A stretch of 64,000 nt of DNA, taken from sequence record MK250019.1. The stretch is one strand, 5' to 3'. This document shows, in pieces, positions 13,107-34,699 of this stretch. The position numbers and the translations under genes were made by a program. The notes below the pieces were generated by a model. It saw only the letters and a program-made list of their open reading frames with translations, did no database searches and had not been told where the DNA came from. The stretch's first letter is position 1. Every line of letters begins with the position of its first letter.

Positions 13107-13142
13107 AATAAATATATTAATAATTTAATAAAATTTAGATAC

Positions 13143-14660
13143 ATGAATAAGAAATTATATAATTCTATAGTTAGAGTAATATCAGAGTCATTATAGAAAT
13201 CATTGTATGAAGGTTTATTTGATGATGTAGATGATATATTATCAAATGATGATATATATTCTTCTTAGTTAATGGATGATTATTTAAAAAAAGTTATATT
13301 AGAAACATTATGTACAACTGATGCTTATCATAATGTTGAAGCAGATGAAGATGACGGTTTACCTATGATAAAATAGAATCCTGATAATAATTTATAGTAT
13401 TATATTGCACCTTACACTACATATAAACGTGAAAAGTTAGGGCCTAGAAAAAGGAAGAGATATAATTTAAATTATTTCTACAGATATATTTTAACATTTG
13501 ATGAAACAGGGGGAATGATATTAGATATTACAAAATTCGGTAATAAAAGAAATTTCATTATTAATGATCAATTATATTAGTTTATTTGTAAAACTCCATA
13601 TACAATAAGTGAAATAAAATATCATTTACCATATAATGAATATACTCCATATACAGAACAATGGGAAAAAATATGGATAATAAACAGAACACCACTTTCT
13701 ATGTCAAAAAATATTCCAAATTCATTTGTTAATAAATTTCCAGAAAAAATAACACCTATGTATTCAGATGAATTAAAAGATGATATGAATCCATCTAATA
13801 ATTCTATAATAGACAGAAAATGGTTTACATCAGATGAAATGTTTTTAACATTTATCCAGAAACTTGTAAATAATCAATTTGATATTTCAGATAAAGAATT
13901 TTTTGTATATAATTAGAATACAATAGATGAACGTAGAAAAGAACTTTTATCAGGTAATCAGGATAAACAAATAGAAGAAGAAAATGATGCAAAATTGAAT
14001 TTCAGTAGAAGTATACTGGGTGAAAAATATTATCAAAAATTTAATCAAATTTCGCAATATTTTCAAGAAAATAACATAAAATTTTACTTAAAAACAATAA
14101 ATACTTTTAGAACATGTAAAATTTGCTTAAAAGATACAGTATTGAATTTAAGACGTTAGAATGGATATATATTTGATGAGATTGATAATATAGAAGAACC
14201 TAATAGAGTAGAACCATTTTTTGAACGATAGCTATTATATAAAATGTTTTGTATAATGAAACATGAAAAATTAAATGACTGGAAAATTCAGCAGACTTAT
14301 GATGAATGTATAAATGGTACTCTGGTAAGTTATAATTTTTATAATACATCAACTTCATATTATGATATAAACACATTACCTATAAAATTTGATAACAAAT
14401 ATGCTATATATAATTTGTATTATGTAATTGGTAAAGCTATATCAGACAGTAAACCGATTTATGAATTAGGCGTTAAAAAATTTGACAAATATCCATATCA
14501 AAATGATGTAACATTAGGTCCAACATCTATATTAGCTGCTAATGAAATAGAAACAACCGGTAATGCATCATTTAATATGTCAATGTTCGATTATAGTTAT
14601 TTAACAGATTAGTTAAAGACAATTATTGATAAAGTTTGTAAAAAATACAAAATAAAGTGA
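13143..14660 (+). CDS. Hypothetical protein (505 aa, code 15) with N-terminal ISE/LYE-GLFDD leader
   Basis: Translated continuously from ATG 13143 to TGA 14658-14660 with TAG=Gln. Confidence 0.7.
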
Positions 14661-14673
14661 AATTGTTATTAAT

Positions 14674-15264
14674 ATGAGAATAACCACATTAAACCAATTA
14701 AAAGAATATACTACATATACATATTATAAATTAAATAAACCTGAATATACAAAAAAGAAAAAAGTTTATATTTGTCAACCTATTAACTATATAGATGAAG
14801 GATGTACACATATGGATATATGGTCAGGATATATATTTTATAAAACTAATGCAGTTTCCAGGAATGTAGGTTATTATGGTTTTTTATTAGATAAAGAATC
14901 AGATGAAACATATAATAATATAATTAAAAAACAACCAAAATATCTTGGTAAAATTTCACCTATGTGGTATGTAAATACTACATTGTATAATATACAATCT
15001 GAAGAAAATTGTAAGTTATATAAAAATCTGAAATTAGAAGAAAATCTATTAACTGAAAATAATAAAGCTATATTTACAGATAAGCATGAAATAGAACAAT
15101 ATATAGATGATATAAGAAATAATATCATTAAGATTCCAGAAGTAGAACATATTGTTACAATGAAAACATGGTATAATGATAAAGATGGAAATAAAATAGA
15201 AGAAACATCAGTTAGACATTTACCAAGTGGGAAAACAGATATAATAAAAACAATAATAAAATAA
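14674..15264 (+). CDS. Hypothetical protein
   Basis: 196-aa TAG-free ORF followed by terminator hairpin AAAGTCTTCAC...GTGAAGACTTT. Confidence 0.6.
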   Translation: MRITTLNQLKEYTTYTYYKLNKPEYTKKKKVYICQPINYIDEGCTHMDIWSGYIFYKTNAVSRNVGYYGFLLDKESDETYNNIIKKQPKYLGKISPMWYVNTTLYNIQSEENCKLYKNLKLEENLLTENNKAIFTDKHEIEQYIDDIRNNIIKIPEVEHIVTMKTWYNDKDGNKIEETSVRHLPSGKTDIIKTIIK

Positions 15265-15352
15265 TGTTAAAATTTAAAGTCTTCACATGCCGTTGTGAAG
15301 ACTTTTTTATTTATTATTATATAAACACTAATTAACTATATTTTTATAAAAA

Positions 15353-16489
15353 ATGAATACTGAAAATAAATTTAATTATGTTCTTGTCGGCGGAACATTT
15401 AATGATAATAAAGGAAAAGAATCTGGCGTAGTGAATAAATTATATCACGCATTAGGTACATTTAATTCTGTTATGTATAATGGTGGTAATTATTTCGATT
15501 TGGTTGGTAATGCTTTATCATCTATTACAGAAACAGATCTTATTATATGGATGGCAGATGTAGATAATGCTAAAGAGAAAATATATCCAGTTAAAAATAC
15601 AGGGTCTGTATTAATTTGCTCAAAAGTTATTAGAGACGGTTATACATATAAAGATGCAATTGCACGTATATTTAAAATGCATGGTAATGCTGTTATTGCA
15701 ATTACAAAAGATAGTAAAACGAATATGTTTGTGTTTGAATTTTGGGATGCATTAGCAAATTGTTGGTACAGTGGTTCTGATATTGAAAAATTAGCATTAA
15801 CAATATATAGGTTTTATATATTCAGTAAAGGCAGTATTCGTCGACAAACAGCACGAGATACCTCATTAATTAAATATAATGATGGTAGACCTGATGATCT
15901 AAATGATTTTATTAAGTTGAATAATAGTCTTGCTGATTTTATTCAAACATCATGTGGTGATAGGTTTTTTGGTAATTTATCTACACGTTGTCAAAAGTTA
16001 TTTCCATCAGAACGTGATGGTAAATTTATTTATGTAAGTCCAAGAAATGTAGATAAAAATAGGTTAACTCCTTCTGATTTTGTTTTATTTAATACAGATG
16101 ATTATACTTATTATTCAGTAGATGAAAAAATAAAGCCATCTGTTGATTCTCCTGTACAATCTGAAATATATAAAGAATTCCCATCTATCAATTATATGAT
16201 TCATGGACATGCATTTATATCTATTATGAAAGAGTTAGATGAAAATAATATTCCTTGTGCAAGTACAGAGAATTATTTTCCATGTGGAGACTTAAGAGAA
16301 TTAACAGAAGTAAAGAAACTTATGAAACATATCATATATGATGAATGTCATAAAGATTATGGTATAATAAATTTGAAAGGACATGGTTTTTTAATGTTCA
16401 GTCAGACTTTTGAACAAATGAAATATATGATTAATGATATATATGCATTCAGAATGAATGATGGTAAACAATTATTTAAATTTTATTAA
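15353..16489 (+). CDS. Class II aldolase/adducin-family domain protein with extra N-terminal domain
   Basis: GNLSTR...KPSVDS...YMIHGHA...INLKGHG matches the class II aldolase metal-binding His pattern. Confidence 0.7.
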   Translation: MNTENKFNYVLVGGTFNDNKGKESGVVNKLYHALGTFNSVMYNGGNYFDLVGNALSSITETDLIIWMADVDNAKEKIYPVKNTGSVLICSKVIRDGYTYKDAIARIFKMHGNAVIAITKDSKTNMFVFEFWDALANCWYSGSDIEKLALTIYRFYIFSKGSIRRQTARDTSLIKYNDGRPDDLNDFIKLNNSLADFIQTSCGDRFFGNLSTRCQKLFPSERDGKFIYVSPRNVDKNRLTPSDFVLFNTDDYTYYSVDEKIKPSVDSPVQSEIYKEFPSINYMIHGHAFISIMKELDENNIPCASTENYFPCGDLRELTEVKKLMKHIIYDECHKDYGIINLKGHGFLMFSQTFEQMKYMINDIYAFRMNDGKQLFKFY

Positions 16490-16491
16490 TA

Positions 16492-17187
16492 ATGGGAAAA
16501 TTCAATATTAAATCATTATTTGTTGAAGAAACAAATACAGACGATGAAGTTAAAGATACTACAGTCGAAACTTCAAATAATTCAAATAATAAACCAAATG
16601 TAGAAAGTAATGTATCTACATCAAACGTACAATCACCAGCATCTATTCCAGCTGATGCATCAGTTAATTCTGGAAAGGAAGAAGTAAATCAAGAACTACT
16701 TAATAAACTATGTAATTATCTAGAAACATGTAAAATCGAAGGTGGTGATTATATGCAACTTAAAAAAGCAGCAAACAGTGATGGAATGAAAGTTATTCCA
16801 GATGAAGCTGTCAGATTCCAAGCTGCATATGCAACGCTAAAAAGTGTAAATCCAAATCTTACAAAAGATATTATTATCAATTCTATTGATACATATATTT
16901 CTGAAATGAATAAACAATATGATATTGCTATTAAACAGATTGAGGAAAAAAGAAAGATTAATGTAGGTGATAAGAAAAGAGCACATGAGGAGAAAGCTCA
17001 ACGAATTGCAATGCTTCAAAAGGAGATTGTAGAATTATCTACTGAAATGACAAAATTATCTGATGAAATTAAAGAAGGTGATGCAGAATGTGATAAGAAT
17101 GTAAAGGAATTTAGAAATGCTGTAGATGTTATTGTATCTGCATTAGAATCAGATAAGAAAAAGATTTCAGAAAAGTTAGTAAATTAA
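16492..17187 (+). CDS. Coiled-coil protein, member of the ABC/OmpA module
   Basis: Disordered N-terminus, then GGDYMQLKKA...FQAAYATL and a long C-terminal coiled coil. Confidence 0.6.
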   Translation: MGKFNIKSLFVEETNTDDEVKDTTVETSNNSNNKPNVESNVSTSNVQSPASIPADASVNSGKEEVNQELLNKLCNYLETCKIEGGDYMQLKKAANSDGMKVIPDEAVRFQAAYATLKSVNPNLTKDIIINSIDTYISEMNKQYDIAIKQIEEKRKINVGDKKRAHEEKAQRIAMLQKEIVELSTEMTKLSDEIKEGDAECDKNVKEFRNAVDVIVSALESDKKKISEKLVN

Positions 17188-17191
17188 TAAT

Positions 17192-17374
17192 ATGAGAGTA
17201 ATAATTAAAAATTACGATTCTACAAAAGCAAAGGATATTATTATTCCTGTAGAAAATAATATGGATAAACATGTAGACTTTTCAGGTGGTTATGTTGTAT
17301 TAAATGATGCAGATGGTAATAAAGTTGTTTATGTAGATTTTATGAAATATCCTGAAGTAACATTAGATTTATAA
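17192..17374 (+). CDS. Small hypothetical protein
   Basis: 60-aa ORF tightly packed between its neighbours. Confidence 0.5.
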   Translation: MRVIIKNYDSTKAKDIIIPVENNMDKHVDFSGGYVVLNDADGNKVVYVDFMKYPEVTLDL

Positions 17375-17389
17375 TAATTAAATAAAAAT

Positions 17390-18454
17390 ATGGCAGAATA
17401 TAACACAAGTGATATTGTAAATGTAGCAAAAAATACAGTATCAAAATGGGAAAAACCTGGTGGAACAACAGGTATGATTGTATTAGGTGTTGTAGTAGGT
17501 GCAATTGCAATTAATATTACACCTATTATGAATTTTATTGCAGCAGCATGCGCAAGCACACTATCTGCAATTGGTATGGCGGCAGCACTTTTTCTAGTTT
17601 TATATTGTTTATTTGATCCTCGTATTCGTAATATTGGTTCAACAATATATTTTATGATTATGCGTAAGATTGAAGGTCTTCTTGTTGATTATGATCCAAT
17701 CTCTATTGTTAAGAGAAAAATTATGCAGATGAATAAGAAGATTCAGGAAATTACCGATAATATGGGAAAGCTTCGAGGTCTTATTGATAAATCAGAAAAA
17801 CGTATTCAAGATAAAAAGAAACAATGTGATCATGATTTTCAACTATTAAATAAGTATAAAGAAACTGGTAAAGCACAAGATGCTGCTGTATATGAACGAC
17901 AAGTTACTCGCCTTACTGAAGTAATTAAAAATTCAGAAGCACGTCTTATTCAGTCAAAACAATGGTATGAAATTATGGGTAAACTGAAACACCAGGCTGA
18001 ATTAACAGTACTTGATGCAACAAATGAAGTAAATGAACGTGTAGAAGAGTGGGAAATGATTAAAGCACAGCATAAGGCATTTACATCTATTGTTGGAATT
18101 ATTAATGGTAAGGATGATCAGTTTAGCTTATTTACTCGTGCAATGGATCATATGGCTGATGATATTTCACAGAAACTTGGAGAAATGTCATTTATCATCG
18201 AGGAAACAGGTGGTTTGATGTCAAAGATTGATATGGATAATCTTGTGATGTCAGATAAAGCAAATGCACTTCTTGCACAATATAATTCTGGTGGTCTTGA
18301 TGCTGTTCTTCTTGGAAGTTTTGCAAAGCAACCAATTGAACACGCACCAGCAGAAAATGTAGAGTTCAAAGAAGCAGAATTTACAAATTTGAATACTATT
18401 ACAAATAATAGGAATAATGTACAACAAACATTAGGTCAACCAAATTGGTTTTAA
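17390..18454 (+). CDS. Membrane-anchored coiled-coil protein, PspA/IM30-like
   Basis: Two N-terminal hydrophobic helices followed by about 250 aa of heptad coiled coil. Confidence 0.55.
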   Translation: MAEYNTSDIVNVAKNTVSKWEKPGGTTGMIVLGVVVGAIAINITPIMNFIAAACASTLSAIGMAAALFLVLYCLFDPRIRNIGSTIYFMIMRKIEGLLVDYDPISIVKRKIMQMNKKIQEITDNMGKLRGLIDKSEKRIQDKKKQCDHDFQLLNKYKETGKAQDAAVYERQVTRLTEVIKNSEARLIQSKQWYEIMGKLKHQAELTVLDATNEVNERVEEWEMIKAQHKAFTSIVGIINGKDDQFSLFTRAMDHMADDISQKLGEMSFIIEETGGLMSKIDMDNLVMSDKANALLAQYNSGGLDAVLLGSFAKQPIEHAPAENVEFKEAEFTNLNTITNNRNNVQQTLGQPNWF

Positions 18455-18516
18455 TAAAATTAAAGAGAATTGTGTAAAAAATACATGATTCTCTTTTTTA
18501 TTTTTAAAAATATATG

Positions 18517-18524
18517 TATCTTTG
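18517..18524 (+). promoter_or_regulatory. Bacteroidetes sigma-A -7 element (TAnnTTTG)
   Basis: TATCTTTG about 20 nt upstream of ATG 18546; the same motif recurs at 23230, 23813, 26547, 28851 and 54352. Confidence 0.7.
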
Positions 18525-18545
18525 AATTAATAAAATATTTATGTT

Positions 18546-18875
18546 ATGATAAAAATAGTTGATACATCATATTATATTATTAATAATAAAGAAAAGAAAG
18601 AATTATTTATATATTACGATACAGAACATAAATTGGATTGTAATATGGATATACTTTCTTTTCAATTAGATTTTAATCTCAAAGATATTGATAATGATAA
18701 TAAAGATGAAATTATTGAACAATATTTTAAAGATAATTGGACAAGATTTTTTATGATAAAATCAGTACCATATGGAGATTTAATGTCTATTGGTATTTCA
18801 TTTGAACAAATATTAAATATGGTTAATGAAATAGCTAAATCAAAAATAATATTTGAAGATTATAAATCAATTTAA
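18546..18875 (+). CDS. Hypothetical protein
   Basis: 109-aa TAG-free ORF behind the promoter. Confidence 0.55.
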   Translation: MIKIVDTSYYIINNKEKKELFIYYDTEHKLDCNMDILSFQLDFNLKDIDNDNKDEIIEQYFKDNWTRFFMIKSVPYGDLMSIGISFEQILNMVNEIAKSKIIFEDYKSI

Positions 18876-18963
18876 TAGACTTTTTAATAAACACGATATA
18901 AAAGAAAAATAGAGAATAATATTAAACATTAATTTAAATAACTTTAATTAAGAATTAAAAATT

Positions 18964-20553
18964 ATGGCAAATGTTGTTTTGCGACCTTGGGTAAAGGTTG
19001 TTGGTGTTATTGCAGTTGTTGCTGCAATTATGTTTGGTGCTTCTAAATTTTTTGGAGGCAGTAATGATGGTGATAATAAGTCATCGAGTGACAGCGGCGG
19101 TTTTTTCAGCGGCATGTTTTCTGGTGGTGATGATGATGTAATCACCATTGGTACAAATACTTATGCAGGTTTTCTGCCATTTATGTATTTGAATAATGGT
19201 CTTGAACCTAATGAAGATTGTCCTATTTATAAGGAATATGGTCTTAAGTTGAAGATTGTTGTTCAGGATGATTTTGCTGCAGGACGTGCAGCATTCAATA
19301 ATGGTGATATTGACATTATTTATTGTACTGCTGATGCTCTTCCTGTTGAGATGAGTGAAGGTTCAAATATGAATGATGCTCGTTTCTTTAATGTATCAAA
19401 CTGGTCACGTGGAGCTGATGCTATTGTAGTTAATAAGAGTATTCAGAATGTAAGTAACTTGATTGGTAAGGTTGTTTGTTGCTCTCAGGGTACAGCATCT
19501 CATACACTGTTGTTGAATACACTTGAAACAAATGGTATTGGAGCTGATAAGGTAAATATGGGAAATTCTACAGATCCTAATAAGGTTAATATTAAGGTTG
19601 TAGATAACGGTCTTGAAGCTGCTTCTGCATTCCGTGCAGGTTCTTGTGATGCAGCTGTTGTATTCTCTCCAGATGATCAGGATTTGGTTGCAACTGTAAA
19701 GGGTGCACATGTATTGATTTCAACAAAGCAAGCATCTAATATTATTTGTGATGGTTTGATTGCAAAGCAGAGCTACCTTGATTCTAATAAAGAGAATGTA
19801 AAGAAACTTATTTCTGCATTGTTGTATGCAAATGATAAAATGAATAGTGACGAAGCAGCAGTAAAGATTGCAGCTAAGGCTTTTGCAAAGGCATATGGAA
19901 CAGATGAGAAGTTTGCAATTGATGGTTCTAAGAATATTCATTATATTACATTGGGAGATGCACAGAACTTCTTTGGTTTGAATAGTTCATATACAGGTAT
20001 GCAGGGTGATGAGCTATATTCAAAAATGGCACGTACTTATGAAAAGTTGGGTCTTTGTAAGAAACCACTTTCATGGCGAAAAGTTTCTTATCCTGATATT
20101 ATTGAATCACTTGCATCTAATGCTGGTGAAGTAAAGGGTGATCAGGCTGCAGAAGCATCAGTAAAGTTTAAAGAAACATCTACATCTGATGCAGAAACAA
20201 AGACTGCAATTTCAGATAAGAAGGTAACTATTGAATATCCTGTTGATAGTGATATTCTTGATAATAATGCGCAGTGTATTATTGATAGAGAGTTCGCTGG
20301 TATTGCAAAGCAGTTTGCAGGTGCAAAGATTCGTATTGTAGGAAATACTGATAATACTGGTAATTATGCATATAATGTTGAATTGTCACGAAGACGTGCA
20401 CAATCAGTTGCAAATTATCTTGTAAAGGAATATGGATTTGATAAGAATCGATTCATTATTGTTGGTAATGGTCCTAAACGTGCAGTAGAAGATAAAGTAG
20501 TAGGAAGTAATAATGCATATCGTACTACAGATTTTCAGTTGGTAACAGAGTAA
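18964..20553 (+). CDS. ABC substrate-binding protein (NMT1/SsuA-like) fused to OmpA-like peptidoglycan-binding domain
   Basis: N-terminal membrane anchor; SBP motif WSRGADAIVV; C-terminal IVGNTDNTG...NVELSRRRAQSV...NGP...YRTTDF OmpA signature. Confidence 0.85.
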   Translation: MANVVLRPWVKVVGVIAVVAAIMFGASKFFGGSNDGDNKSSSDSGGFFSGMFSGGDDDVITIGTNTYAGFLPFMYLNNGLEPNEDCPIYKEYGLKLKIVVQDDFAAGRAAFNNGDIDIIYCTADALPVEMSEGSNMNDARFFNVSNWSRGADAIVVNKSIQNVSNLIGKVVCCSQGTASHTLLLNTLETNGIGADKVNMGNSTDPNKVNIKVVDNGLEAASAFRAGSCDAAVVFSPDDQDLVATVKGAHVLISTKQASNIICDGLIAKQSYLDSNKENVKKLISALLYANDKMNSDEAAVKIAAKAFAKAYGTDEKFAIDGSKNIHYITLGDAQNFFGLNSSYTGMQGDELYSKMARTYEKLGLCKKPLSWRKVSYPDIIESLASNAGEVKGDQAAEASVKFKETSTSDAETKTAISDKKVTIEYPVDSDILDNNAQCIIDREFAGIAKQFAGAKIRIVGNTDNTGNYAYNVELSRRRAQSVANYLVKEYGFDKNRFIIVGNGPKRAVEDKVVGSNNAYRTTDFQLVTE

Positions 20554-20564
20554 TAAAAATATAT

Positions 20565-20621
20565 AAACATGCGGTTTATAGAATAATATAATTTTAATTA
20601 TATTCTATAGATCGCATGTTT
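20565..20621 (+). terminator. Long hairpin after SBP-OmpA gene
   Basis: AAACATGCG..TATAGAATA..ATAT / ATAT..TCTATAG..CGCATGTTT followed by T-run. Confidence 0.6.
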
Positions 20622-20632
20622 TTAATTTAGTT

Positions 20633-21085
20633 ATGAAATATAGAAATGATTTAATAGGTAAAAAAATTTTAATTATATGTAATAGTATAGGCAGCAGTTA
20701 TAAAAGGTTATATTGTTCTTATGTATTAGGAAAAATAATTGAATATAACCCAGCTACAAATAAGATTATGGTTATTAGAAATACTGGACATATTGGTTCA
20801 GCTGTTGAATTTAAAATTAATAATCATGATCCTTTTGAATATCCATATTATTTTGATAATCGGTTCGCATCAAGAGAACCAGAAAATGATAATGAAACAT
20901 GGTGGTATGTAGCATTTGCTGATGATGAAGCTATACAATTATTAAAACGAAATTTATTAAAACAAAATAATAGAAGACCTGTATATAAATCATACTATTT
21001 ATCAACTCTTTGCTATGGTAAACATAAATCTAAAAAAGAATATTTAACATATCTATTAAATGAATTAAACAATGAATCTAATTAA
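20633..21085 (+). CDS. Hypothetical protein inserted in the ABC cluster
   Basis: 150-aa ORF overlapping the permease start. Confidence 0.55.
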   Translation: MKYRNDLIGKKILIICNSIGSSYKRLYCSYVLGKIIEYNPATNKIMVIRNTGHIGSAVEFKINNHDPFEYPYYFDNRFASREPENDNETWWYVAFADDEAIQLLKRNLLKQNNRRPVYKSYYLSTLCYGKHKSKKEYLTYLLNELNNESN

Positions 21086-21908
21086 ACGTCTATTTAAATT
21101 TGGTGGTGATTCTGATTTTGGAACAGTTACCAATGTAATTATTAGTATTATTGGTGCAGTTATTATTATTATGGGATGGCATTGTATTTCAGCATATAAC
21201 GTAGTACCTAGTAATATTCTTCCTGATCCTTTTAAAGTGATTGGTAGTATTCCAACATTAATTTCAGAAAATCATTTATTTGCAAATATTTGGTATACAG
21301 TAAAATTGAATTTATCATGTTATGTGTATGCTATTTTATTTTCATTTCCTATAGGATTCTTAATTGCATTGTATCCTATTAATAATATCTTATTTGGAAA
21401 ATATATTAATTCAGTCCGATTTATTCCATTACCTTCTATTACAGGAATTTTCCTTGCAATATTTGGTTTGACATTTGGAATGAAGGTATGGTTTTTGACA
21501 GTTGCAATTATGATTTATATTATTCCATCTGTTGTAAATAAAGTAAATGATTTGCAAAACCCTGCTAATGAAAAAGATAATGTATATTTGCAAACTGCAC
21601 AGACAATCGGAATGACTTCATGGCAAAAATTTCGTTATGTATATTTCCCTTATGTAACAGGTGGCGTAGTTGATTCTTGTATTGACTTATTGGCTATTAG
21701 TTATAGTTATGTTGTTATTGCAGAAATGATTTATAAAGATGGTGCAGTAAGTGGAATGGGTGCATTGATTAATACGATGGTTAGACAATCACAAATGGCA
21801 TCTGCATTTGCATTACTTTTCCTTATTATTATTATCGGTTGTGTACAAGATTTTCTTTTTAAGAAAGGTGCAAAACTATTATTTCCTTACAAATATAAAA
21901 ATGAATAA
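21072..21908 (+). CDS. ABC transporter permease (SsuC/TauC-like)
   Basis: Multiple TM helices; EAA-loop-like TAQTIGMTSWQKFRYVYFP. Confidence 0.85.
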   Translation: MNLIKRLFKFGGDSDFGTVTNVIISIIGAVIIIMGWHCISAYNVVPSNILPDPFKVIGSIPTLISENHLFANIWYTVKLNLSCYVYAILFSFPIGFLIALYPINNILFGKYINSVRFIPLPSITGIFLAIFGLTFGMKVWFLTVAIMIYIIPSVVNKVNDLQNPANEKDNVYLQTAQTIGMTSWQKFRYVYFPYVTGGVVDSCIDLLAISYSYVVIAEMIYKDGAVSGMGALINTMVRQSQMASAFALLFLIIIIGCVQDFLFKKGAKLLFPYKYKNE

Positions 21909-21913
21909 AAATT

Positions 21914-22858
21914 ATGAGTGATTTTAAAACATTATTCGGACAAACAAATAATAATCAAGACGAGAAAAAGAATGATATTATTTCTGAACAGAATAATACA
22001 TCTGTAGATGATTCTAATATACAATCAAAGAATACAAATTCACAAGTAATTAATACTACAACTGATGGCAAATATGAATGTGAAGATGTAGATGTATTTA
22101 ATTTTGTAAATATCAATAAATCATTTGGTGATTTTAAGTTATTTGACAATCTTAATCTTACAATTAAAGACTTTAAAGATGAGGGACAATTCATTACATT
22201 TATAGGTCAATCTGGATGTGGGAAAACTCAGCTTCTTAAGATGATCTCAGGAATCTCAAAACCTGATTCCGGTAAGATTATGTTATATGGTAAGGAAATT
22301 AAAGAATCTGATAATATACCTATGGTATTTCAGCAGTATTCAAGTTTTGAATGGATGACTGTTCTAGAAAATATCGCATTACCTATGAAACTTGCTGGTA
22401 TTGATAAGAAAACGCGTGAAGAAAGAGCACGTAAAATTATTAATCTTATAGGTCTAGATGGTAGTGAAAATAAGTATTGTAGATATGGTGTATTATCTGG
22501 TGGTATGTTGCAACGAGCATCAATAGGTAGAGCATTAGCATGTGATTCGAAACTATTGATGTTAGATGAATATTCATCTGGTCTTGATTATTTTACAAAA
22601 TTTGAACTTCAAGATTTGCTTCTTAAAATTTTCAATAATAGAGATGTTGACAGAACATTTCTTATGGTAACACATGATATTTCAGAGGCAGTTTACCTTT
22701 CTAATAGAATTTATATTTTGGAACCAAATCCATGTAGAATTAAGGATATTATCGATATTAAATTCAGTCAACCACGAACACAAGCTATTCGTGAAACAGA
22801 TGAATTTAAAGACTATTACGCAAAAGTTTTAAAGGCATTAAATGAAACTGTTAAATAA
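21914..22858 (+). CDS. ABC transporter ATP-binding protein (SsuB/TauB-like)
   Basis: Walker A GQSGCGKT, signature LSGGM, Walker B LLMLDE, and H-loop MVTHDISEA. Confidence 0.92.
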   Translation: MSDFKTLFGQTNNNQDEKKNDIISEQNNTSVDDSNIQSKNTNSQVINTTTDGKYECEDVDVFNFVNINKSFGDFKLFDNLNLTIKDFKDEGQFITFIGQSGCGKTQLLKMISGISKPDSGKIMLYGKEIKESDNIPMVFQQYSSFEWMTVLENIALPMKLAGIDKKTREERARKIINLIGLDGSENKYCRYGVLSGGMLQRASIGRALACDSKLLMLDEYSSGLDYFTKFELQDLLLKIFNNRDVDRTFLMVTHDISEAVYLSNRIYILEPNPCRIKDIIDIKFSQPRTQAIRETDEFKDYYAKVLKALNETVK

Positions 22859-22863
22859 ATTAT

Positions 22864-23175
22864 ATGGTATTTTCAGAATTAACAAATAATAATACAGTTA
22901 CTATATATACAAAAAATGAGGTAAATACTTATTTTGTAAAACGAATAGAATCTAATGATATTTCAACAAATGTCATATTAGAAGACTATAATTATATGAT
23001 TACAGTTCCAAGAGATGTATCATTTTATATAATACATATAAATAATGATATTTCTATTATCACATGTGACAATAGAATAATTGAGTTAATTAATACGGTT
23101 AAGAGATTAACAAAAAATTCTATAGGTCTTCAACTAAATGAACTATTTGGAAATGTATTCAAAACAAATATTTAA
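22864..23175 (+). CDS. Hypothetical protein
   Basis: 103-aa ORF followed by a terminator hairpin. Confidence 0.5.
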   Translation: MVFSELTNNNTVTIYTKNEVNTYFVKRIESNDISTNVILEDYNYMITVPRDVSFYIIHINNDISIITCDNRIIELINTVKRLTKNSIGLQLNELFGNVFKTNI

Positions 23176-23263
23176 TTATAAATCATGGGTATTTTTTATC
23201 CATGATTTTTTTATTTTGAATAAAATATGTATCTTTGTATTATTAATAAAATAATTAATTATT

Positions 23264-23788
23264 ATGAAGCAGTCTAAATTGTATACTAAGAATGAAGGAG
23301 GAAATTGTCATAGAGGTCATAATCATGGTTCTGAAAAGAAATACAGATCTCGATATGATAGACATAAAAAGATTACAAAATTTGAAATTGATAATGAAAT
23401 AACAAGGAAGAAATCTCATTATAATAAAAATAAACGAACAAATTATGATTATGGACCTCTATATAATTACTTACTTAAACAAGTAGGAAAGAAATGGGAA
23501 ACTGTATGGAAAGATATATTTCCACGTGTTGATAACAATCCTGAACCTATTGTATATATGGTTATAAATATAAATACACATGGAATTGTTATTACACATG
23601 ATATAAGTAATGCAGAACCTATGTTTAATTGTTCATTATATAATAATGGTGTTCGTTCTTATTCAACATTATATGTTGATGAAAATGATATATTACAATT
23701 TGTTGATAAAGATTTCAAACCCAATGATAGATATGAAGGTCTTGGCTTTGGACAATCTTTCAATGGAAAAGAAATTTCTACCATATAA
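23264..23788 (+). CDS. Hypothetical early protein
   Basis: 174-aa ORF behind TATCTTTG at 23230. Confidence 0.6.
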   Translation: MKQSKLYTKNEGGNCHRGHNHGSEKKYRSRYDRHKKITKFEIDNEITRKKSHYNKNKRTNYDYGPLYNYLLKQVGKKWETVWKDIFPRVDNNPEPIVYMVININTHGIVITHDISNAEPMFNCSLYNNGVRSYSTLYVDENDILQFVDKDFKPNDRYEGLGFGQSFNGKEISTI

Positions 23789-24517: not shown

Positions 24518-24573
24518 CAAAAATTATTATAGAGAATAAACAACATATGTTTATTCTCTATTTTTTATATAAT

Positions 24574-25350
24574 ATGGCATATATAAATTTACATAAAATA
24601 TCTGATACTTTATATAAATGTGATTGTGGAAAAGAATTTAATTCTGCACGTTCATTAGCATCTCATGCTAGATTTTGTAATTAGTATATAAAAGTAGATA
24701 AAACGACAATATATAAACAAAATGATGTATATAAATGTGAATGTGGTAACACATTTAAAAATTATTAGAGTTTTAATGCACATTTATCACATTGTGATAT
24801 TCATCATAATTATAATAATACTACAAGAAAATTAAGACCATCTGAATTATATCATACAATGTCATGGGATAATAAATCATTATTTGAAATAGAAATGATT
24901 AGATAGAGATCTGGACAAACATTTTCAAAAAAACAAAAAGCTGGAGAAATAATTAATTGGTGGAAAAATAGGCATTTAACAAATTTACATAAATTACATA
25001 TACGCGAAGGTATGTTAAATTATTTAGATAATTTATATGATACACATATATAGGCGCATTATAATAAAAAATCTATTTAGTTTATAAATGATTTAAATCT
25101 AAAAAATAATTGGCATTTACAACATGCTGAAAACGGAGGAGAAATACGTTGTTTAGGATATTTTTTAGATGGATATGATAAGGAAAAAAATATTGTATTT
25201 GAATATGATGAATCTAGACATTATATAGATGTTTATAATAATATATTAAGTAAAAAAGATATAGAACGACAAAATAACATTATTGATAAATTACATTGTC
25301 AATTTTGGAGATATAATGAAAAAATAAAATTATTATATAGAGTATATTAA
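24574..25350 (+). CDS. Free-standing homing-endonuclease-like protein (two Zn fingers + EDxHD/Vsr-like nuclease), 5 in-frame TAG
   Basis: YKCDCGKEF...HARFC and YKCECGNTF...HLSHC; C-terminal FLDGYDKEKNIVFEYDESRHY. Absent from the standard-code track. Confidence 0.72.
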
Positions 25351-25352
25351 TC

Positions 25353-26489
25353 ATGATTACAATAACAGAACAATATATAAAGGATTATAAAGATAAGTTA
25401 GATAAAATAGCAAAGTCATTCGATTTGGATAAACAGAAGATAATCGTTGAAGAATTATCTATTAAAGTTTCAGCACCAGATTTTTGGGATGATTTTGAAA
25501 ATGCAACAACTATTACAAAGGAACTTAATACAGCAAAAGAAAAAATTAAAGATGTTTCACATATCAATATATTAATAGATGATCTTGAAACTGCTTTAAT
25601 GTATTATAAAGAGTTTGAAGGTAAGGATGAAGAAGAACTTGTTAATCTTGCTAATGATGAATTAATTAAAGAATTTAAAATATTTGAAAACAAATATAGA
25701 TTTGTAGATCCGACTGATTCATTGGGAGCAGTATTAGATATTAATGCAGGTGCAGGTGGAACAGAAGCAAATGATTGGGCAAATATGTTATTCAGAATGT
25801 ATGATATGTGGGCTAAATCAAATGGTTATAAATTTAAGATTTTATATTATTCAGAAGGTGATAAAGTAGGTATTAAAAATGTATCTATTGAAATTACCGG
25901 TAATAATGCATATGGTACATTAAAAGGTGAAACTGGTGTTCATCGTCTTGTTCGTGTTTCTCCTTATAATGCGCAGGGAAAGAGAATGACAAGTTTTGCG
26001 GCAGTTTCTGTTGTTCCGTTGGTAGATAATTCAATTAAAGTTGAAATTGATGAGTCTAAATTAACAATAGATACATTTAGATCTTCTGGTGCCGGTGGAC
26101 AAAATGTTAATAAAGTTGAATCAGGTGTACGTGTAAATTATATGTATACAGATCCTGATACAGGTGAAACTGAAAAGATTCAGGTTGCAAATACAGAAAC
26201 GCGTGATCAACCAAAAAATAAGGAACGTGCAATGCAAATTCTTAAATCTATTCTTTATAAAAAAGCGTTAGATAAACAGCTTGCAAAGAAAAAGGAAATT
26301 GAAGATGCTAAACTAAAAAATGAATGGGGTGCACAGATTAGATCTTATGTATTTGATGATAAGCGTGTAAAGGATCATCGTACTGGTTATCAAACAACTG
26401 ATGTAGATTCTGTTATGAATGGAAATTTAAATGGATTTATAGAATCTTATAATAATTGGATAATTGAGCAGGAAAATAATAAACTTTAA
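25353..26489 (+). CDS. prfB: Peptide chain release factor 2
   Basis: AGAGGTEANDWA, GETGVHRLVRVSPY (RF2 SPF-type anticodon), SGAGGQNVNK, WGAQIRSYV. Continuous ORF with no internal frameshift site. Confidence 0.95.
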   Translation: MITITEQYIKDYKDKLDKIAKSFDLDKQKIIVEELSIKVSAPDFWDDFENATTITKELNTAKEKIKDVSHINILIDDLETALMYYKEFEGKDEEELVNLANDELIKEFKIFENKYRFVDPTDSLGAVLDINAGAGGTEANDWANMLFRMYDMWAKSNGYKFKILYYSEGDKVGIKNVSIEITGNNAYGTLKGETGVHRLVRVSPYNAQGKRMTSFAAVSVVPLVDNSIKVEIDESKLTIDTFRSSGAGGQNVNKVESGVRVNYMYTDPDTGETEKIQVANTETRDQPKNKERAMQILKSILYKKALDKQLAKKKEIEDAKLKNEWGAQIRSYVFDDKRVKDHRTGYQTTDVDSVMNGNLNGFIESYNNWIIEQENNKL

Positions 26490-33500: not shown

Positions 33501-34699
33501 ATAAACATACGTCTCATCCATCTTGTTCTGAAATTCGCATGATTATCTGCATTAGTTGATGTATAGTCATTTCGTTCTGATATGGACTAAAAATCAGAAA
33601 TCCAATTAACTGTATTTTTTACATTTGAATTTGGTTTATGGTCTGTCTAATTAGGATCTAATGCATCTATCTTTTTCATTAAACCATTAGAATAAAATGT
33701 TTTTACATTTTTTACAGAAATTGTTATTTTTGTTTCTGCATCTTTATGTTCATCATATGCAGTTGCATACTCATTATCCCATATTGATTCAATATCAATT
33801 TCACATGGACCGCATTCTAACGCATATATAGGAAAGTCGTTTTGCTCTACACTATATACAGCAGTTGCATTTCCTGTAGATTTATCCCATTTATAACCAG
33901 TCTATAAAATACGTCTGTCAAATACATAAATAATCATTTTGAAATATCTATATATATCTGGTAATATCCATCTTTGCCAAACATCATCATATGCAGCTTT
34001 TCTATACATTTCCAATAATGTACGAATTTTCAAATCAATTCCTTCATAACATTCTAATGTAATCTTTGCATCCTTAAGTCGTACTCCTTTTCCCGGTTCA
34101 AATGATGTCAGTTTTTCTAATCCCGTAATTTTTTTGAACAGATAAGGCATACTTCTCTATATTTCATAAAGACCTTGAACAAATGTTTTAATATAAGATG
34201 CACGCGCATCTTCATTCCTGTTCATCAGATAATTATATGTATTATAATGTTCTTGATTACTCCAATTTTCCGTATTATCAAATTCTAAAAAATTTAAATC
34301 AAGTAAACCCATTGGAAATTGATCATAATCTTCATAATATATATTATTATAAAGACTTGTTTTCTATTGGTTCTTTATTGTTTCTGTATCAAGAACTGAA
34401 CAACCCCAATCACCAAATTCAACTTTAAACATAAGTCGAGTAGGATCTTCAAAACCTGATCTGAATACTTCAGAAGACATATCAGTACCATATTCATTTC
34501 CCATATGAAATCGTTCCATGATTTCATTCTGTTCCATAAATCGTCCAGATGATAAAATCCACGATTCACTGTCAGTTACTTTCTACTCTAATTCATTTGT
34601 TTTAGTATCTCCAGTAAGTAATGAATTAAATCCTTTTAAAAAATTGTATGCAGAATTTGTCTTTTTATTTAAGCCTTTTAATGTACTAAAAATACCCAT
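30539..34699 (-). CDS. Large structural protein (1386 aa, code 15): tail-tube/baseplate-like N-terminal domain + long 14-aa tandem repeats
   Basis: Six track ORFs share one frame and are joined by TAGs (both ends and part of the interior translated by hand). Contains ITLECYEGIDLKIRTLLEMYRKAAYD...WILPD and repeats EMNLDHNDMNYVSP / NMDMTSLNQNVSIA. Confidence 0.7.
31070..32960 (-). repeat. 42-nt (14-aa) coding tandem repeat array, two sub-families
   Basis: The unit CATTTCTGGAGAAACATAATTCATATCATTATGATCTAAATT (42 nt) recurs about 32050-32960; a MDMT-type 42-nt unit recurs about 31070-31740. Confidence 0.85.

What the first reader, a model, noticed from the sequence alone, without database searches (positions are those of the whole stretch)
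16492..22858. Complete host-like envelope module: coiled-coil + PspA-like protein + SBP-OmpA fusion + ABC permease + ATPase
Seen: a full three-component SsuABC/TauABC-like transporter whose binding protein is membrane-anchored and fused to an OmpA peptidoglycan-binding domain. Two coiled-coil proteins lie upstream, one with TM helices. All are TAG-free, so they can be expressed before recoding. Two unrelated small genes, a promoter and terminators are interspersed, suggesting long residence in the phage. Inference: the system may sense or repair envelope damage, exclude superinfection or delay lysis rather than simply import nutrients; a complete ABC importer is unusual in a phage.
Basis: partly seen in the sequence, partly recalled or inferred. 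Interest (0 to 1): 0.7.

Follow-up and report, generated by a model that had tools for sequence, protein, structure and literature searches.

The report
Phage copy of PspA-like/ABC envelope cassette
A Prevotella megaphage (Lak-A2) carries an intact five-gene cassette shared by many huge phages and some Bacteroidota: a membrane-anchored PspA-like protein, a coiled-coil partner and an ABC importer whose binding protein is tethered to the cell wall. This operon type was already described by comparative genomics, but nobody has tested what it does.

Summary
The window is Prevotella phage Lak-A2 (100% identity to MK250019.1) and TAG is recoded. The block 14674-23788 has no in-frame TAG.

The five genes are real:
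- 16492-17187: coiled-coil protein.
- 17390-18454: a protein with two TM helices and a PspA/ESCRT-III-like domain. hhalign to Bacteroidota PspA gives 94% probability, E 1.4e-7, with clean controls, and the ten best Foldseek hits are all Vipp1/PspA.
- 18964-20553: TM anchor + NMT1-type binding protein + OmpA domain.
- 21072-21908: permease.
- 21914-22858: ABC ATPase.

They form a fixed-order cassette. It is complete in 51 of 58 IMG/VR loci and 50 of 80 genome loci, including complete chromosomes of cultured Tenacibaculum and Aquimarina. It is under purifying selection between Lak-A and Lak-B (dN/dS 0.06-0.30).

It is not new as a kind. Ravi et al. 2024 described bacterial operons joining PspA or TM-Snf7, an AAA+ ATPase, an ABC transporter and a PBPb-OmpA protein. 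An October 2026 preprint notes ABC transporters beside phage pspA.

Additions here:
- the Lak instance;
- a conserved fifth gene family;
- no AAA+ partner found in phages;
- a TAG-free coding block with its own promoter-like motif.

The function (membrane maintenance coupled to import of an unknown solute) is inferred, not shown.

The parts
16492..17187 (+). Gene 1 ('CC' family, 231 aa). It has an N-terminal motif M..K..[FL]...[FL]V[ED][ED], a disordered linker, a small 3-helix domain (67-119) and one long helix (125-228).
   Evidence: No Pfam, NCBIfam or PDB match. The model has pLDDT 82. It is always directly upstream of gene 2 in viral and bacterial loci. Its own clusters in the ESM Atlas are from Uroviricota and Bacteroidota.
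17192..17374 (+). 60-aa ORF inserted between genes 1 and 2; specific to Lak-A and Lak-B.
   Evidence: Found only in Lak-close loci L004, L007-L011 and L014. It is 78% identical in Lak-B2.
17390..18454 (+). Gene 2 (354 aa): TM hairpin (helices 25-54 and 57-75) followed by a cytoplasmic PspA/IM30 (ESCRT-III superfamily)-like domain (about 99-301).
   Evidence: AF2 pLDDT 77. The Foldseek PDB top 10 are all Vipp1/PspA, E 3e-3 to 3e-2. VIA gives Vipp1 Z 12.2 and E. coli PspA Z 11.6. The first named Atlas hit is PspA_IM30. hhalign to Bacteroidota PF04012 proteins gives 94%, E 1.4e-7, with reversed controls at 0.9-1.3% and shuffled controls at 0.3% or less. The family has 751 representatives of 50%-identity clusters.
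18462..18496 (+). Terminator-like hairpin (15 pairs) with a T-run, 8 nt after the stop of gene 2.
   Evidence: The region has 10 terminator-like sites against 1.5 expected from shuffles.
18515..18527 (+). Promoter-like motif TGTATCTTTGAAT. It contains TAnnTTTG, which I recall as the Bacteroidetes -7 element. It lies 19 nt before the ATG at 18546.
   Evidence: It differs by one mismatch from a motif that occurs exactly at 23228, 23811, 26545 and 54350. There are 18 matches with up to 2 mismatches, against 9.6 expected (repeat family D5; sequence).
18546..18875 (+). 109-aa ORF, a Lak-specific insert.
   Evidence: Found only in Lak-close loci. No family hit.
18964..20553 (+). Gene 3 (529 aa): N-terminal TM anchor, then an NMT1/SsuA-type substrate-binding domain (about 60-375), a linker, and an OmpA-like peptidoglycan-binding domain (427-516).
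   Evidence: Pfam OmpA 2e-15, NMT1_2 1.8e-9, NMT1 8e-8. PHROG 25518 matches over the full length at 8e-46. The OmpA motif NTD..G....N..LS..RA is invariant in alignment A2. 649 relatives at E up to 1e-5 among the 8000 candidates scored.
20565..20621 (+). Long AT-rich imperfect hairpin (outer arms AAACATGCG / CGCATGTTT) followed by a T-run, just after gene 3.
   Evidence: Read by eye. The terminator scan did not report it, possibly because the stem is too AT-rich for its rule.
20633..21085 (+). 150-aa ORF, a Lak-specific insert that overlaps the permease start by 14 nt. It has four paralogues in Lak-B2.
21072..21908 (+). Gene 4 (278 aa): type I ABC importer permease of the NitT/TauT type, with an EAA-like loop QTAQTIG...P.
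   Evidence: NCBIfam SaoP 5e-17 and TauC 3.7e-8, both below cut-off. PHROG 6743 at 1.6e-20. 94% identical in Lak-B2 with dN/dS 0.067.
21914..22858 (+). Gene 5 (314 aa): ABC ATPase with an N-terminal low-complexity extension of about 60 aa. All catalytic motifs are present.
   Evidence: ABC_tran 2e-26. Best NCBIfam hits are SaoA, NtrCD and TauB types, all below cut-off. Motifs read.
23180..23208 (+). Terminator-like hairpin that closes the second transcription unit, after the 103-aa ORF at 22864-23175.
   Evidence: An exact promoter-like motif follows at 23228.

Best explanation
Shown. The region is the phage copy of a conserved five-gene envelope cassette with a fixed order:
1. a coiled-coil protein;
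2. a PspA/ESCRT-III-like protein anchored by two TM helices;
3. a TM-anchored NMT1-type binding protein fused to an OmpA peptidoglycan-binding domain;
4. a permease;
5. an ABC ATPase.
The cassette occurs in many huge phages of Bacteroidota and, patchily, in Bacteroidota chromosomes. In Lak it lies in a TAG-free block. A terminator and promoter-like motif split it into two units. It is under purifying selection.

Inferred mechanism:
- Translation of the cassette does not need the TAG reassignment, so it can be made at any stage of infection, including before recoding is established.
- The PspA-like protein sits in the host inner membrane through its TM hairpin and polymerises on the cytoplasmic face. 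There it would stabilise or remodel the membrane and keep the proton-motive force during the megaphage's infection cycle.
- The coiled-coil protein would be its regulator or adaptor. Its short N-terminal hydrophobic and acidic peptide would dock on the membrane or on a partner.
- The ABC importer, held at the membrane-wall interface by the TM anchor and the OmpA domain of its binding protein, would import a still unidentified solute that supports this state.
- The phage version appears to work without the AAA+ ATPase that abuts the cassette in one bacterial clade.
For: - Identity of the window: 100% to MK250019.1.
- Cassette order: 51 of 58 IMG/VR loci carry all five genes in the same order; the other 7 are shorter or more fragmentary loci, most cut by a contig end. 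50 of 80 genome loci are complete, including complete chromosomes of Aquimarina sp. SS2-1 and Tenacibaculum sp. nBUS_03. It is also in the 735-kb phage LR756501 and in Lak-B.
- PspA-like nature of gene 2.
- Intact ABC and OmpA motifs.
- TAG-free block. Terminator and promoter-like motif.
- dN/dS Lak-A2 against Lak-B2: gene 2 0.058, permease 0.067, gene 3 0.149, gene 1 0.30.
- The region is covered by contigs in metatranscriptome libraries of 4 studies. This fits transcription but does not prove it.
- Published comparative genomics reached the same functional reading for the bacterial operon type (PMC11237479; supplement). A 2026 preprint notes complete ABC transporters beside 15 phage pspA genes (10.64898/2026.10.24.761521).
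- A Band_7/SPFH gene, a known PspA neighbour, lies next to the cassette in L006.
Against: - There is no experiment in any organism.
- Gene 2 does not reach the Pfam PspA_IM30 model. The structural Z-scores lie within the range that long helices reach by chance (note).
- The binding domain is too far from any solved or curated binding protein to name a ligand: best PDB E about 0.1 and NCBIfam scores far below cut-off.
- The complex prediction for gene 1 with gene 2 gave no verdict.
- The RNA evidence comes from contigs and could be carried-over DNA.
- Absence of TAG allows early expression but does not show when the genes are expressed.
- The patchy bacterial distribution (3-6% of sampled genomes), with helicase and AAA+ neighbours, would also fit a defence island.
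Confidence: 0.5

Rival explanations
1. Superinfection exclusion or anti-phage defence. The wall-tethered, membrane-embedded complex senses or blocks envelope breach by another phage. It would act as a defence island in bacteria, and megaphages would carry it to protect the infected cell.
For: - The distribution in bacteria is patchy: 10 of 301 Bacteroidota and 19 of 301 Bacteroidales genomes sampled.
- In Flavobacteriia the cassette is followed by an AAA+ ATPase, an SF1 helicase that matches Mokosh MkoA/MkoC models (1e-45) and a 2OG-Fe dioxygenase.
- The OmpA domain resembles ZorB/MotB anchors.
- In the midpoint-rooted tree, viral and bacterial copies are interleaved.
Against: - None of the five core proteins matches a PADLOC defence model beyond generic OmpA or ABC similarity.
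- The helicase and the dioxygenase accompany only 6 and 11 of the 80 loci, and no viral locus.
- The cassette holds no nuclease or other effector.
Confidence: 0.2
2. An ordinary auxiliary metabolic transporter. The ABC importer simply brings in a nutrient (sulfonate, taurine, nitrate, or a thiamine or pyrimidine precursor) for phage replication, and the two helical proteins are unrelated neighbours.
For: The binding protein, permease and ATPase all fall in the NitT/TauT (SsuABC/TauABC/NrtBCD-like) group. All catalytic motifs are intact.
Against: - The two helical genes accompany the transporter in the same order in virtually every complete locus, across sequences down to about 21% identity.
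- The binding protein is always TM-anchored and fused to OmpA.
- Scores lie far below every curated equivalog cut-off.
- Gene 2 has the lowest dN/dS of the set.
Confidence: 0.15
3. Control of lysis timing. The PspA-like protein counteracts holin-type membrane damage to delay lysis until the very large virions are complete.
For: From general knowledge, PspA is induced by and counteracts inner-membrane damage. The cassette lies next to late genes such as the terminase at 10953-13106.
Against: - The same cassette exists in bacterial chromosomes with no visible phage context.
- No holin or endolysin was identified beside it.
- It is TAG-free, whereas the late genes around it are recoded.
Confidence: 0.05
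4. An assembly chimera of host and phage DNA at this point.
For: The module is host-like, and G+C is slightly higher here (0.28-0.31) than in the flanks (0.24-0.26).
Against: - The locus is collinear in 15 independently assembled Lak genomes: 6 at 99% identity or more, 9 at about 78%.
- It also occurs in Lak-like contigs of 230-550 kb.
- It carries the phage's own promoter-like motif.
- At 25-31% G+C it is far from a typical bacterial chromosome.
Confidence: 0.01

Closest known systems
Bacterial operons joining PspA or TM-anchored Snf7, a double AAA+ ATPase, an ABC ATPase, a permease and a PBPb+OmpA binding protein (Ravi et al., mSystems 2024, PMC11237479; example OGG56892.1)
   Same: Both have a membrane-anchored ESCRT-III-superfamily protein, a binding protein with a signal or TM segment fused to OmpA, a permease and an ABC ATPase in one operon. 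In 16 Flavobacteriia/Cytophagia loci an AAA+ gene abuts the ABC ATPase. The authors propose the same reading: membrane remodelling linked to solute transport, with OmpA binding the wall.
   Different: In the published example the order is PspA, PBPb-OmpA, permease, ATPase, TM-Snf7, AAA+. Here the TM-anchored protein is PspA-like and lies upstream. The soluble partner is a separate coiled-coil family with no PspA similarity. None of the 58 viral loci, and none of five near-complete phage genomes, has the AAA+ gene.
Phage-encoded PspA of huge phages (Yuan & Chen, bioRxiv 2026, 10.64898/2026.10.24.761521)
   Same: The preprint reports PspA homologues in huge phages, 15 of 189 next to a complete ABC transporter and 36 next to SPFH proteins, with a proposed role in mitigating membrane stress.
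   Different: The main text does not mention the OmpA fusion, the coiled-coil partner, the fixed five-gene order, the Lak locus or the bacterial chromosomal copies. I could not tell whether its 15 loci are this cassette, because its supplement is not held.
Classical Psp and Lia systems (E. coli PspABC, B. subtilis LiaIH) and Vipp1/IM30
   Same: Both share the ESCRT-III-type helical hairpin fold and the DP...I..L motif at the start of helix 1. The expected site of action is the cytoplasmic face of the inner membrane.
   Different: Gene 2 has no match to Pfam PF04012. The amphipathic helix alpha-0 is replaced by a TM hairpin, so no PspBC or LiaI recruiter would be needed. Tenacibaculum sp. nBUS_03 has a canonical PspA elsewhere as well as this cassette.
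SsuABC / TauABC / NrtBCD (NitT/TauT-family ABC importers)
   Same: Both have an NMT1-type binding protein, a TauC/SsuC-like permease and a TauB/NtrCD-like ATPase.
   Different: All scores are far below the equivalog cut-offs. The binding protein is membrane-anchored and wall-tethered rather than free or a lipoprotein. The ligand is unknown. The invariant residues include several aspartates (QDD, SPDD) whose position in the fold was not determined.
Bacillus phage G gp243-gp250
   Same: It has a permease (gp243), an ABC ATPase (gp245) and two NMT1+OmpA fusion proteins (gp249, gp250; 28% identity over 85% of the query). A soluble coiled-coil protein (gp246) and a TM + coiled-coil protein (gp247) lie between them.
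   Different: The gene order differs. gp246 and gp247 show no detectable homology to genes 1 and 2 by BLASTP or HMM. The host is Gram-positive.
Wall-anchored inner-membrane complexes (MotB/PomB, Pal, TssL, ZorB)
   Same: Both have a TM anchor and a C-terminal OmpA-like domain with the conserved peptidoglycan-binding motif.
   Different: Here the anchored module is a solute-binding domain that serves an ABC transporter, not a stator or a channel.

Membership tests
PspA/IM30/Vipp1 (Pfam PF04012; ESCRT-III superfamily) - gene 17390-18454 | Match to the curated family model PF04012 above its gathering score | tested here: not met
   Gene 2 has no PF04012 hit at E up to 0.1. The nearest held Lak record has none at E up to 1. 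The same holds for the LR756501 homologue.
PspA/IM30/Vipp1 (Pfam PF04012; ESCRT-III superfamily) - gene 17390-18454 | Profile-level sequence homology to bona fide PF04012 proteins | tested here: met
   hhalign of the 138-sequence family alignment against an alignment of 22 Bacteroidota PF04012-positive proteins gave probability 94%, E 1.4e-7 and 162 columns, starting at the shared DP motif. Reversed alignments gave 0.9-1.3%, 20 column shuffles gave 0.3% or less, and the gene 1 family gave 3.7%.
PspA/IM30/Vipp1 (Pfam PF04012; ESCRT-III superfamily) - gene 17390-18454 | ESCRT-III fold: a long alpha1-alpha2/3 hairpin followed by alpha4 and alpha5 | tested here: met
   The model has helices 103-159, 162-239, 244-272 and 276-301. 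The Foldseek top 10 are all Vipp1/PspA, aligned over about 215 columns, E 3e-3 to 3e-2. VIA gives Vipp1 Z 12.2 and PspA(1-144) Z 11.6 at rmsd 2.8. The Atlas PspA_IM30 cluster aligns with TM 0.49/0.60. Caveat: the Z values are within the range seen for unrelated long helices.
PspA/IM30/Vipp1 (Pfam PF04012; ESCRT-III superfamily) - gene 17390-18454 | N-terminal amphipathic helix alpha-0 as the membrane anchor; a soluble or peripheral protein | tested here: not met
   Two hydrophobic TM helices (25-54, 57-75) precede the PspA-like domain.
PspA/IM30/Vipp1 (Pfam PF04012; ESCRT-III superfamily) - gene 17390-18454 | Assembly into rings or rods and membrane remodelling or protection | not testable with these tools
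   This needs purified protein, EM and liposome assays.
NitT/TauT-type ABC importer (SsuABC/TauABC-like) - genes 18964-20553, 21072-21908, 21914-22858 | ABC ATPase with Walker A, Q-loop, signature, Walker B and H-loop | tested here: met
   ABC_tran 93.6 bits against a cut-off of 25. Motifs GQSGCGKT, FQQ, LSGGM, LLMLDE and THD were read.
NitT/TauT-type ABC importer (SsuABC/TauABC-like) - genes 18964-20553, 21072-21908, 21914-22858 | Type I importer permease (BPD_transp_1 fold with EAA loop) | tested here: inconclusive
   The Lak protein has no Pfam hit. It matches NCBIfam SaoP/TauC/CysT permeases below cut-off. Homologues in phage G and in L005 carry BPD_transp_1. An EAA-like loop is visible by eye.
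NitT/TauT-type ABC importer (SsuABC/TauABC-like) - genes 18964-20553, 21072-21908, 21914-22858 | NMT1/SsuA-type periplasmic binding domain | tested here: met
   NMT1_2 38.2 bits (cut-off 24.7) and NMT1 32.9 bits (cut-off 20.5). Atlas look-alikes are all SsuA/THI5/NMT1 clusters.
NitT/TauT-type ABC importer (SsuABC/TauABC-like) - genes 18964-20553, 21072-21908, 21914-22858 | Equivalog-level identity with SsuA/TauA, SsuC/TauC or SsuB/TauB, which would give the substrate | tested here: not met
   SsuA_fam 67.8 against 163.5; TauA 34 against 304; TauC 33 against 342; TauB 168 against 357. The best solved binding proteins reach only E about 0.1-0.4.
OmpA-like peptidoglycan-binding domain (PF00691) - residues 427-516 of 18964-20553 | Family model match and the conserved NTD..G....N..LS..RA motif that holds the wall-binding Asp and Arg | tested here: met
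   OmpA 57.4 bits against a cut-off of 27.2. T462, D463, G466, N471, L474, S475, R478 and A479 are invariant in alignment A2. PDB hits to OprF, Omp38, Pal and MotB C-terminal domains reach 2e-22.
PspA/TM-Snf7 + AAA+ + ABC + PBPb-OmpA operon (Ravi et al. 2024) | One operon with a TM-anchored ESCRT-III-like gene, a PBPb-OmpA binding protein, a permease and an ABC ATPase | tested here: met
   compared with the published example.
PspA/TM-Snf7 + AAA+ + ABC + PBPb-OmpA operon (Ravi et al. 2024) | A linked AAA+ ATPase (inactive and active domains in tandem) | tested here: not met
   The gene is absent within 9 kb in the window and in all 58 viral loci. It is not found in five whole huge-phage records that carry the cassette, at E up to 1e-3. 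It abuts the ABC ATPase in 16 bacterial loci.
PspA/TM-Snf7 + AAA+ + ABC + PBPb-OmpA operon (Ravi et al. 2024) | A second, soluble PspA gene in the operon | tested here: not met
   The soluble partner (16492-17187) shows no PspA similarity: hhalign 3.7% and no structural match.

The most novel reading that the evidence does not exclude
The five genes would form one self-contained machine that megaphages install before TAG recoding takes hold. In it the ATP cycle of the wall-tethered ABC transporter, rather than a Vps4- or PspF-like AAA+ ATPase, would drive or gate the assembly of a membrane-anchored ESCRT-III-like polymer through the coiled-coil adaptor. The phage would then actively reshape or reinforce the host inner membrane. 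The cassette may also be primarily phage-borne, with the bacterial copies derived from phages. That reading rests on viral lineages occupying the deep branches of the midpoint-rooted tree, and that tree has no reliable root.
Probability: 0.1. Interest if true: 0.8.

Novelty: new member of a known kind. Interest (0 to 1): 0.45.

Why it matters
Bacterial ESCRT-III relatives (PspA, Vipp1) protect and remodel membranes, but little is known about how their assembly is controlled outside the classical Psp and Lia systems. This cassette couples such a protein to a wall-tethered ABC transporter. It has been kept intact in the largest known gut phages and in culturable marine Bacteroidota such as Tenacibaculum and Aquimarina.

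That gives two practical openings:
- culturable bacterial hosts in which the cassette could be studied;
- a concrete candidate for how megaphages keep the host envelope working during infection.

Lak phages have no cultured system, so the bacterial copies are the realistic route to a function.

Tried and rejected
1. The equal ORF sizes 10,000 bases apart (15353/25353 at 378 aa; 18964/28898 at 529 aa) looked like a duplication. BLASTP shows no similarity, so it is coincidence.
2. Pfam, NCBIfam and PHROG gave nothing consistent for genes 1 and 2. An HMM search of PDB sequences with the gene 2 profile gave only coiled-coil noise; CHMP1B appeared at E 1.5-3.
3. Homology of phage G gp246 and gp247 to genes 1 and 2 was not detectable by BLASTP or HMM. 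Only the architecture is alike.
4. The search for related loci with the gene 2 alignment failed because it has no conserved stretch. The gene 3 alignment was used instead.
5. Complex prediction for gene 2 (77-312) with gene 1 (60-231) scored 0.00 and gave no verdict. It counts neither for nor against binding.
6. PADLOC gave no defence-system match for the core genes.
7. NCBIfam's top names (SaoX, SaoP, SaoA) refer to an ABC transport system treated in a preprint on selenoprotein families (title seen; the paper was not read). Scores are far below cut-off, so this is not relevant.
8. A naive ORF-length test for alternative codes in related loci was uninformative and was not used.
9. The sigma-70 promoter scan gave fewer sites than the shuffles did (79 against 91). 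A spaced TTTG...TAnnTTTG pattern was not enriched either. Only the repeated 13-mer motif is.
10. RNA-library contigs cover the cassette, but they cannot show strand, ends or expression level, and DNA carry-over is not excluded.

Full report
What the window is. The region 16000-23500 is 100% identical to Prevotella phage Lak-A2 (MK250019.1, 541 kb). It is 99.2% identical to Lak-A1 and Lak-C1, and about 78% identical over its first 5 kb to the nine Lak-B genomes. G+C is 23-31%. Reading TAG as a sense codon raises the number of ORFs of at least 150 aa from 27 to 49. Among 51 non-overlapping genes there are 221 in-frame TAG in 18,813 codons. The nine genes between 14674 and 23788 (2,604 codons) have none, where about 30 would be expected. 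A terminase large subunit with 18 TAG lies just upstream (10953-13106). A TAG-free release factor gene lies downstream (25353-26489). The locus is therefore part of a genuine megaphage genome, in its TAG-free gene class, and is not a chimera.

The observation.
- Gene 3 (18964-20553) has an N-terminal hydrophobic anchor, NMT1 and NMT1_2 domains and a C-terminal OmpA domain. All three domains score above Pfam gathering thresholds.
- Gene 5 is an ABC ATPase with every catalytic motif.
- Gene 4 has no Pfam hit. It matches TauC/SaoP-type permeases in NCBIfam and PHROG 6743, and its homologues carry BPD_transp_1.
- Gene 2 (17390-18454) has two TM helices followed by long helices.
- Gene 1 (16492-17187) is largely a coiled coil.

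Three small ORFs (60, 109 and 150 aa) lie between these genes. A strong terminator-like hairpin (18462-18496) is followed by a promoter-like motif (18515-18527). That motif differs by one base from a 13-mer found exactly at four other intergenic sites in the window, and it contains TAnnTTTG, which I recall as the Bacteroidetes -7 element. A second hairpin follows gene 3, and a terminator closes the block at 23180-23208. In Lak-A the module is therefore split into two transcription units.

A conserved cassette. The fused binding protein matches PHROG 25518 over its full length. tblastn finds it in all Lak genomes, in the 735-kb phage LR756501 (41% identity), in Bacillus phage G gp249 and gp250 (28%) and in a 38-kb faecal phage contig. 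Distant members of the gene 2 family (22% identity) sit in the same arrangement: a protein of about 200 aa, then a TM-helical protein of about 335 aa, then the OmpA fusion, the permease and the ATPase. One of these loci has a Band_7 gene beside it.

A scan of IMG/VR with an alignment of gene 3 returned 58 loci, mostly on contigs of 100-550 kb. Profiles of the five families find all five, on one strand and in the same order, in 51 of them. The other 7 are shorter or more fragmentary loci, most cut by a contig end. The three small ORFs and the upstream class II aldolase-like gene occur only in Lak-A and Lak-B, so they are lineage-specific insertions into an otherwise contiguous cassette. Between Lak-A2 and Lak-B2, dN/dS is 0.058 for gene 2, 0.067 for the permease, 0.149 for gene 3 and 0.30 for gene 1. 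The genes are maintained by selection.

The cassette is also bacterial. The same scan of one genome per prokaryotic species found 168 relatives, of which the best 80 were kept; 50 of the 80 loci hold the full cassette. Many are gut or rumen MAG contigs that cluster with Lak-like phages and may be misbinned. Others are complete chromosomes or assemblies of cultured strains: Aquimarina sp. SS2-1, A. litoralis, Tenacibaculum sp. nBUS_03, T. finnmarkense, T. halocynthiae, T. caenipelagi, Aureisphaera galaxeae and Lacihabitans sp.

In Tenacibaculum the upstream flank holds panC, a RadA-like gene and a ClC channel gene, so there is no visible prophage there. The family is patchy: 10 of 301 sampled Bacteroidota genomes and 19 of 301 Bacteroidales genomes have gene 2. 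In 16 Flavobacteriia/Cytophagia loci a 635-aa AAA+ ATPase (AAA plus AAA_lid_6) follows the ABC ATPase closely, abutting it in most. Some of these loci add an SF1 helicase and a 2OG-Fe dioxygenase. No viral locus has this AAA+ gene, and five whole huge-phage records with the cassette lack it at E up to 1e-3.

A maximum-likelihood tree of gene 3 places Lak in a well-supported clade of viral and gut-MAG sequences. The isolates fall in a 42-row bacterial clade nested among viral lineages. The tree is midpoint-rooted and has long branches, so the direction of transfer is open.

What gene 2 is. The family is large: 751 representatives of 50%-identity clusters at E up to 1e-3. It has no Pfam or NCBIfam model. 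The AlphaFold model (pLDDT 77) shows a TM hairpin, then helices 77-101, 103-159, 162-239, 244-272 and 276-301.
- The ten best Foldseek matches in the PDB are all Vipp1 or PspA, aligned over their whole length (E 3e-3 to 3e-2).
- The independent aligner ranks Vipp1 first (Z 12.2) and E. coli PspA 1-144 fourth (Z 11.6, rmsd 2.8). These values are within the range that long helices reach by chance.
- The first named cluster in the ESM Atlas is PspA_IM30.
- As a sequence-level test I aligned 22 PF04012-positive proteins from Bacteroidota genomes and compared the profiles. The result was probability 94%, E 1.4e-7 and 162 columns, starting at the shared DP motif. Reversed alignments gave 0.9-1.3%, twenty column shuffles gave 0.3% or less, and the gene 1 family gave 3.7%.

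Gene 2 is therefore a divergent, membrane-anchored member of the PspA/ESCRT-III superfamily and not a canonical PspA. Tenacibaculum sp. nBUS_03 has a canonical PspA elsewhere in its genome.

What gene 1 is. It belongs to a family found only with the cassette. Its features are a conserved N-terminal peptide (basic residues, a few hydrophobic residues, then acidic residues, as in MGKFNIKSLFVEE), a disordered linker, a small three-helix domain with a PG.DY motif and a single helix of about 100 residues. It has no match in the PDB, and only its own clusters appear in the Atlas. I read the N-terminal peptide as a membrane-docking or partner-docking element; that is inference. A complex prediction with gene 2 gave no verdict.

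The transporter. Its parts fall in the NitT/TauT group, but every curated equivalog cut-off is missed by a wide margin. The nearest solved binding proteins (TauA, SsuA, an NrtA-like protein) reach only E about 0.1-0.4. The substrate cannot be named. The OmpA domain keeps the peptidoglycan-binding motif. The topology implied by the sequence is a binding domain held between an inner-membrane anchor and the wall.

Expression. Contigs from metatranscriptome libraries of four studies cover 28-29 of 30 bins of the cassette in three runs, at 90-99% identity (most pieces 95% or more). This fits transcription. However, contigs give no strand or ends, and DNA carry-over is not excluded.

Comparison with what is known. 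Ravi et al. [quoted passage not shown] They proposed a link between membrane remodelling and solute transport. Yuan and Chen (bioRxiv, October 2026) report 189 pspA genes in huge phages, 15 of them beside complete ABC transporters. The kind is therefore known from comparative genomics, and phage carriage of PspA with ABC transporters has been noted. No function has been tested anywhere.

This analysis adds:
- the Lak locus;
- the fixed five-gene core, including a fifth, unannotated family;
- the breadth of the cassette in huge phages and in culturable Bacteroidota;
- no AAA+ partner found in phages;
- the TAG-free coding block with its own promoter-like motif.

Verdict. The most likely reading is a membrane-maintenance and remodelling cassette coupled to import of an unknown solute, whose translation does not depend on the TAG reassignment (confidence about 0.5). 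The main rivals are a role in defence or superinfection exclusion (0.2) and a plain nutrient importer (0.15). Novelty: a new member of a known kind. Interest is moderate.

Noticed in passing
L004 (Lak-B2) 12854-13858 and 14909-15307; window 21914-22858: In Lak-B the ABC ATPase keeps the first 10 residues of the Lak-A gene, but its core is only 40% identical, with a canonical LSGGQ signature. An 83%-identical 3' remnant of the Lak-A-type ATPase lies about 1 kb downstream. This looks like a replacement inside the gene. RNA-library contigs of other Lak strains also diverge from the window at 22068.
   Followed up: partly
window 20633-21085; L004 10662-12040 and 15683-16165: The 150-aa ORF inserted before the permease has four paralogues in Lak-B2 (36-49% identity). 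No family match was found. It may be a small gene family spreading within Lak genomes.
   Followed up: partly
window 25353-26489: A TAG-free peptide chain release factor gene (PCRF + RF-1 domains) sits in the same TAG-free class of genes. It is probably relevant to the TAG reassignment. I did not determine whether it is RF1-like or RF2-like.
   Followed up: no
window 15353-16489: A 378-aa protein with a C-terminal class II aldolase/adducin domain (E 2e-13) and an unknown N-terminal half ends 2 nt before gene 1. It is specific to Lak-A and Lak-B and under purifying selection (dN/dS 0.11).
   Followed up: partly
window 23228, 23811, 26545, 54350 (exact); 18515, 28849 (one mismatch): A repeated intergenic motif TGTATCTTTGTAT lies within a conserved block of about 75 nt (repeat family D5). 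It is probably the promoter of one class of Lak genes and carries a TAnnTTTG element.
   Followed up: partly
window 31172-32982 (- strand ORF 30539-34699) and 332-918: There are long arrays of 42-nt repeats (14 aa) inside a 1386-aa TAG-recoded ORF, and 69-nt repeats (23 aa) inside the ORF at 92-1396.
   Followed up: no
L127 12990-18528; L142 12355-17896: In Aquimarina and Tenacibaculum the cassette is followed by an AAA+ ATPase (AAA + AAA_lid_6), an SF1 helicase that matches Mokosh MkoA/MkoC models (1e-45) and a 2OG-Fe dioxygenase (PF10014). In Tenacibaculum sp. nBUS_03 the AAA+ gene is split into two ORFs.
   Followed up: partly
window 24547-25350: A TAG-recoded 267-aa ORF (5 TAG) sits between two TAG-free blocks and matches a C2HC zinc-finger model (PF22992, E 4e-9).
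   Followed up: no
L006 988-1887: A Band_7/SPFH gene lies two genes upstream of the cassette on an environmental contig of 15 kb, and also on a 191-kb contig. The same PspA-SPFH association is reported for bacterial and phage PspA.
   Followed up: no
L061-L064, L063, L006 (viral or environmental loci): A deep-branching clade of the cassette has a longer gene 3 (590-650 aa). In L006 the precomputed Pfam hits show only OmpA and no NMT1 domain, and gene 2 scores are very low (19-49 bits). This may be a distinct variant.
   Followed up: no
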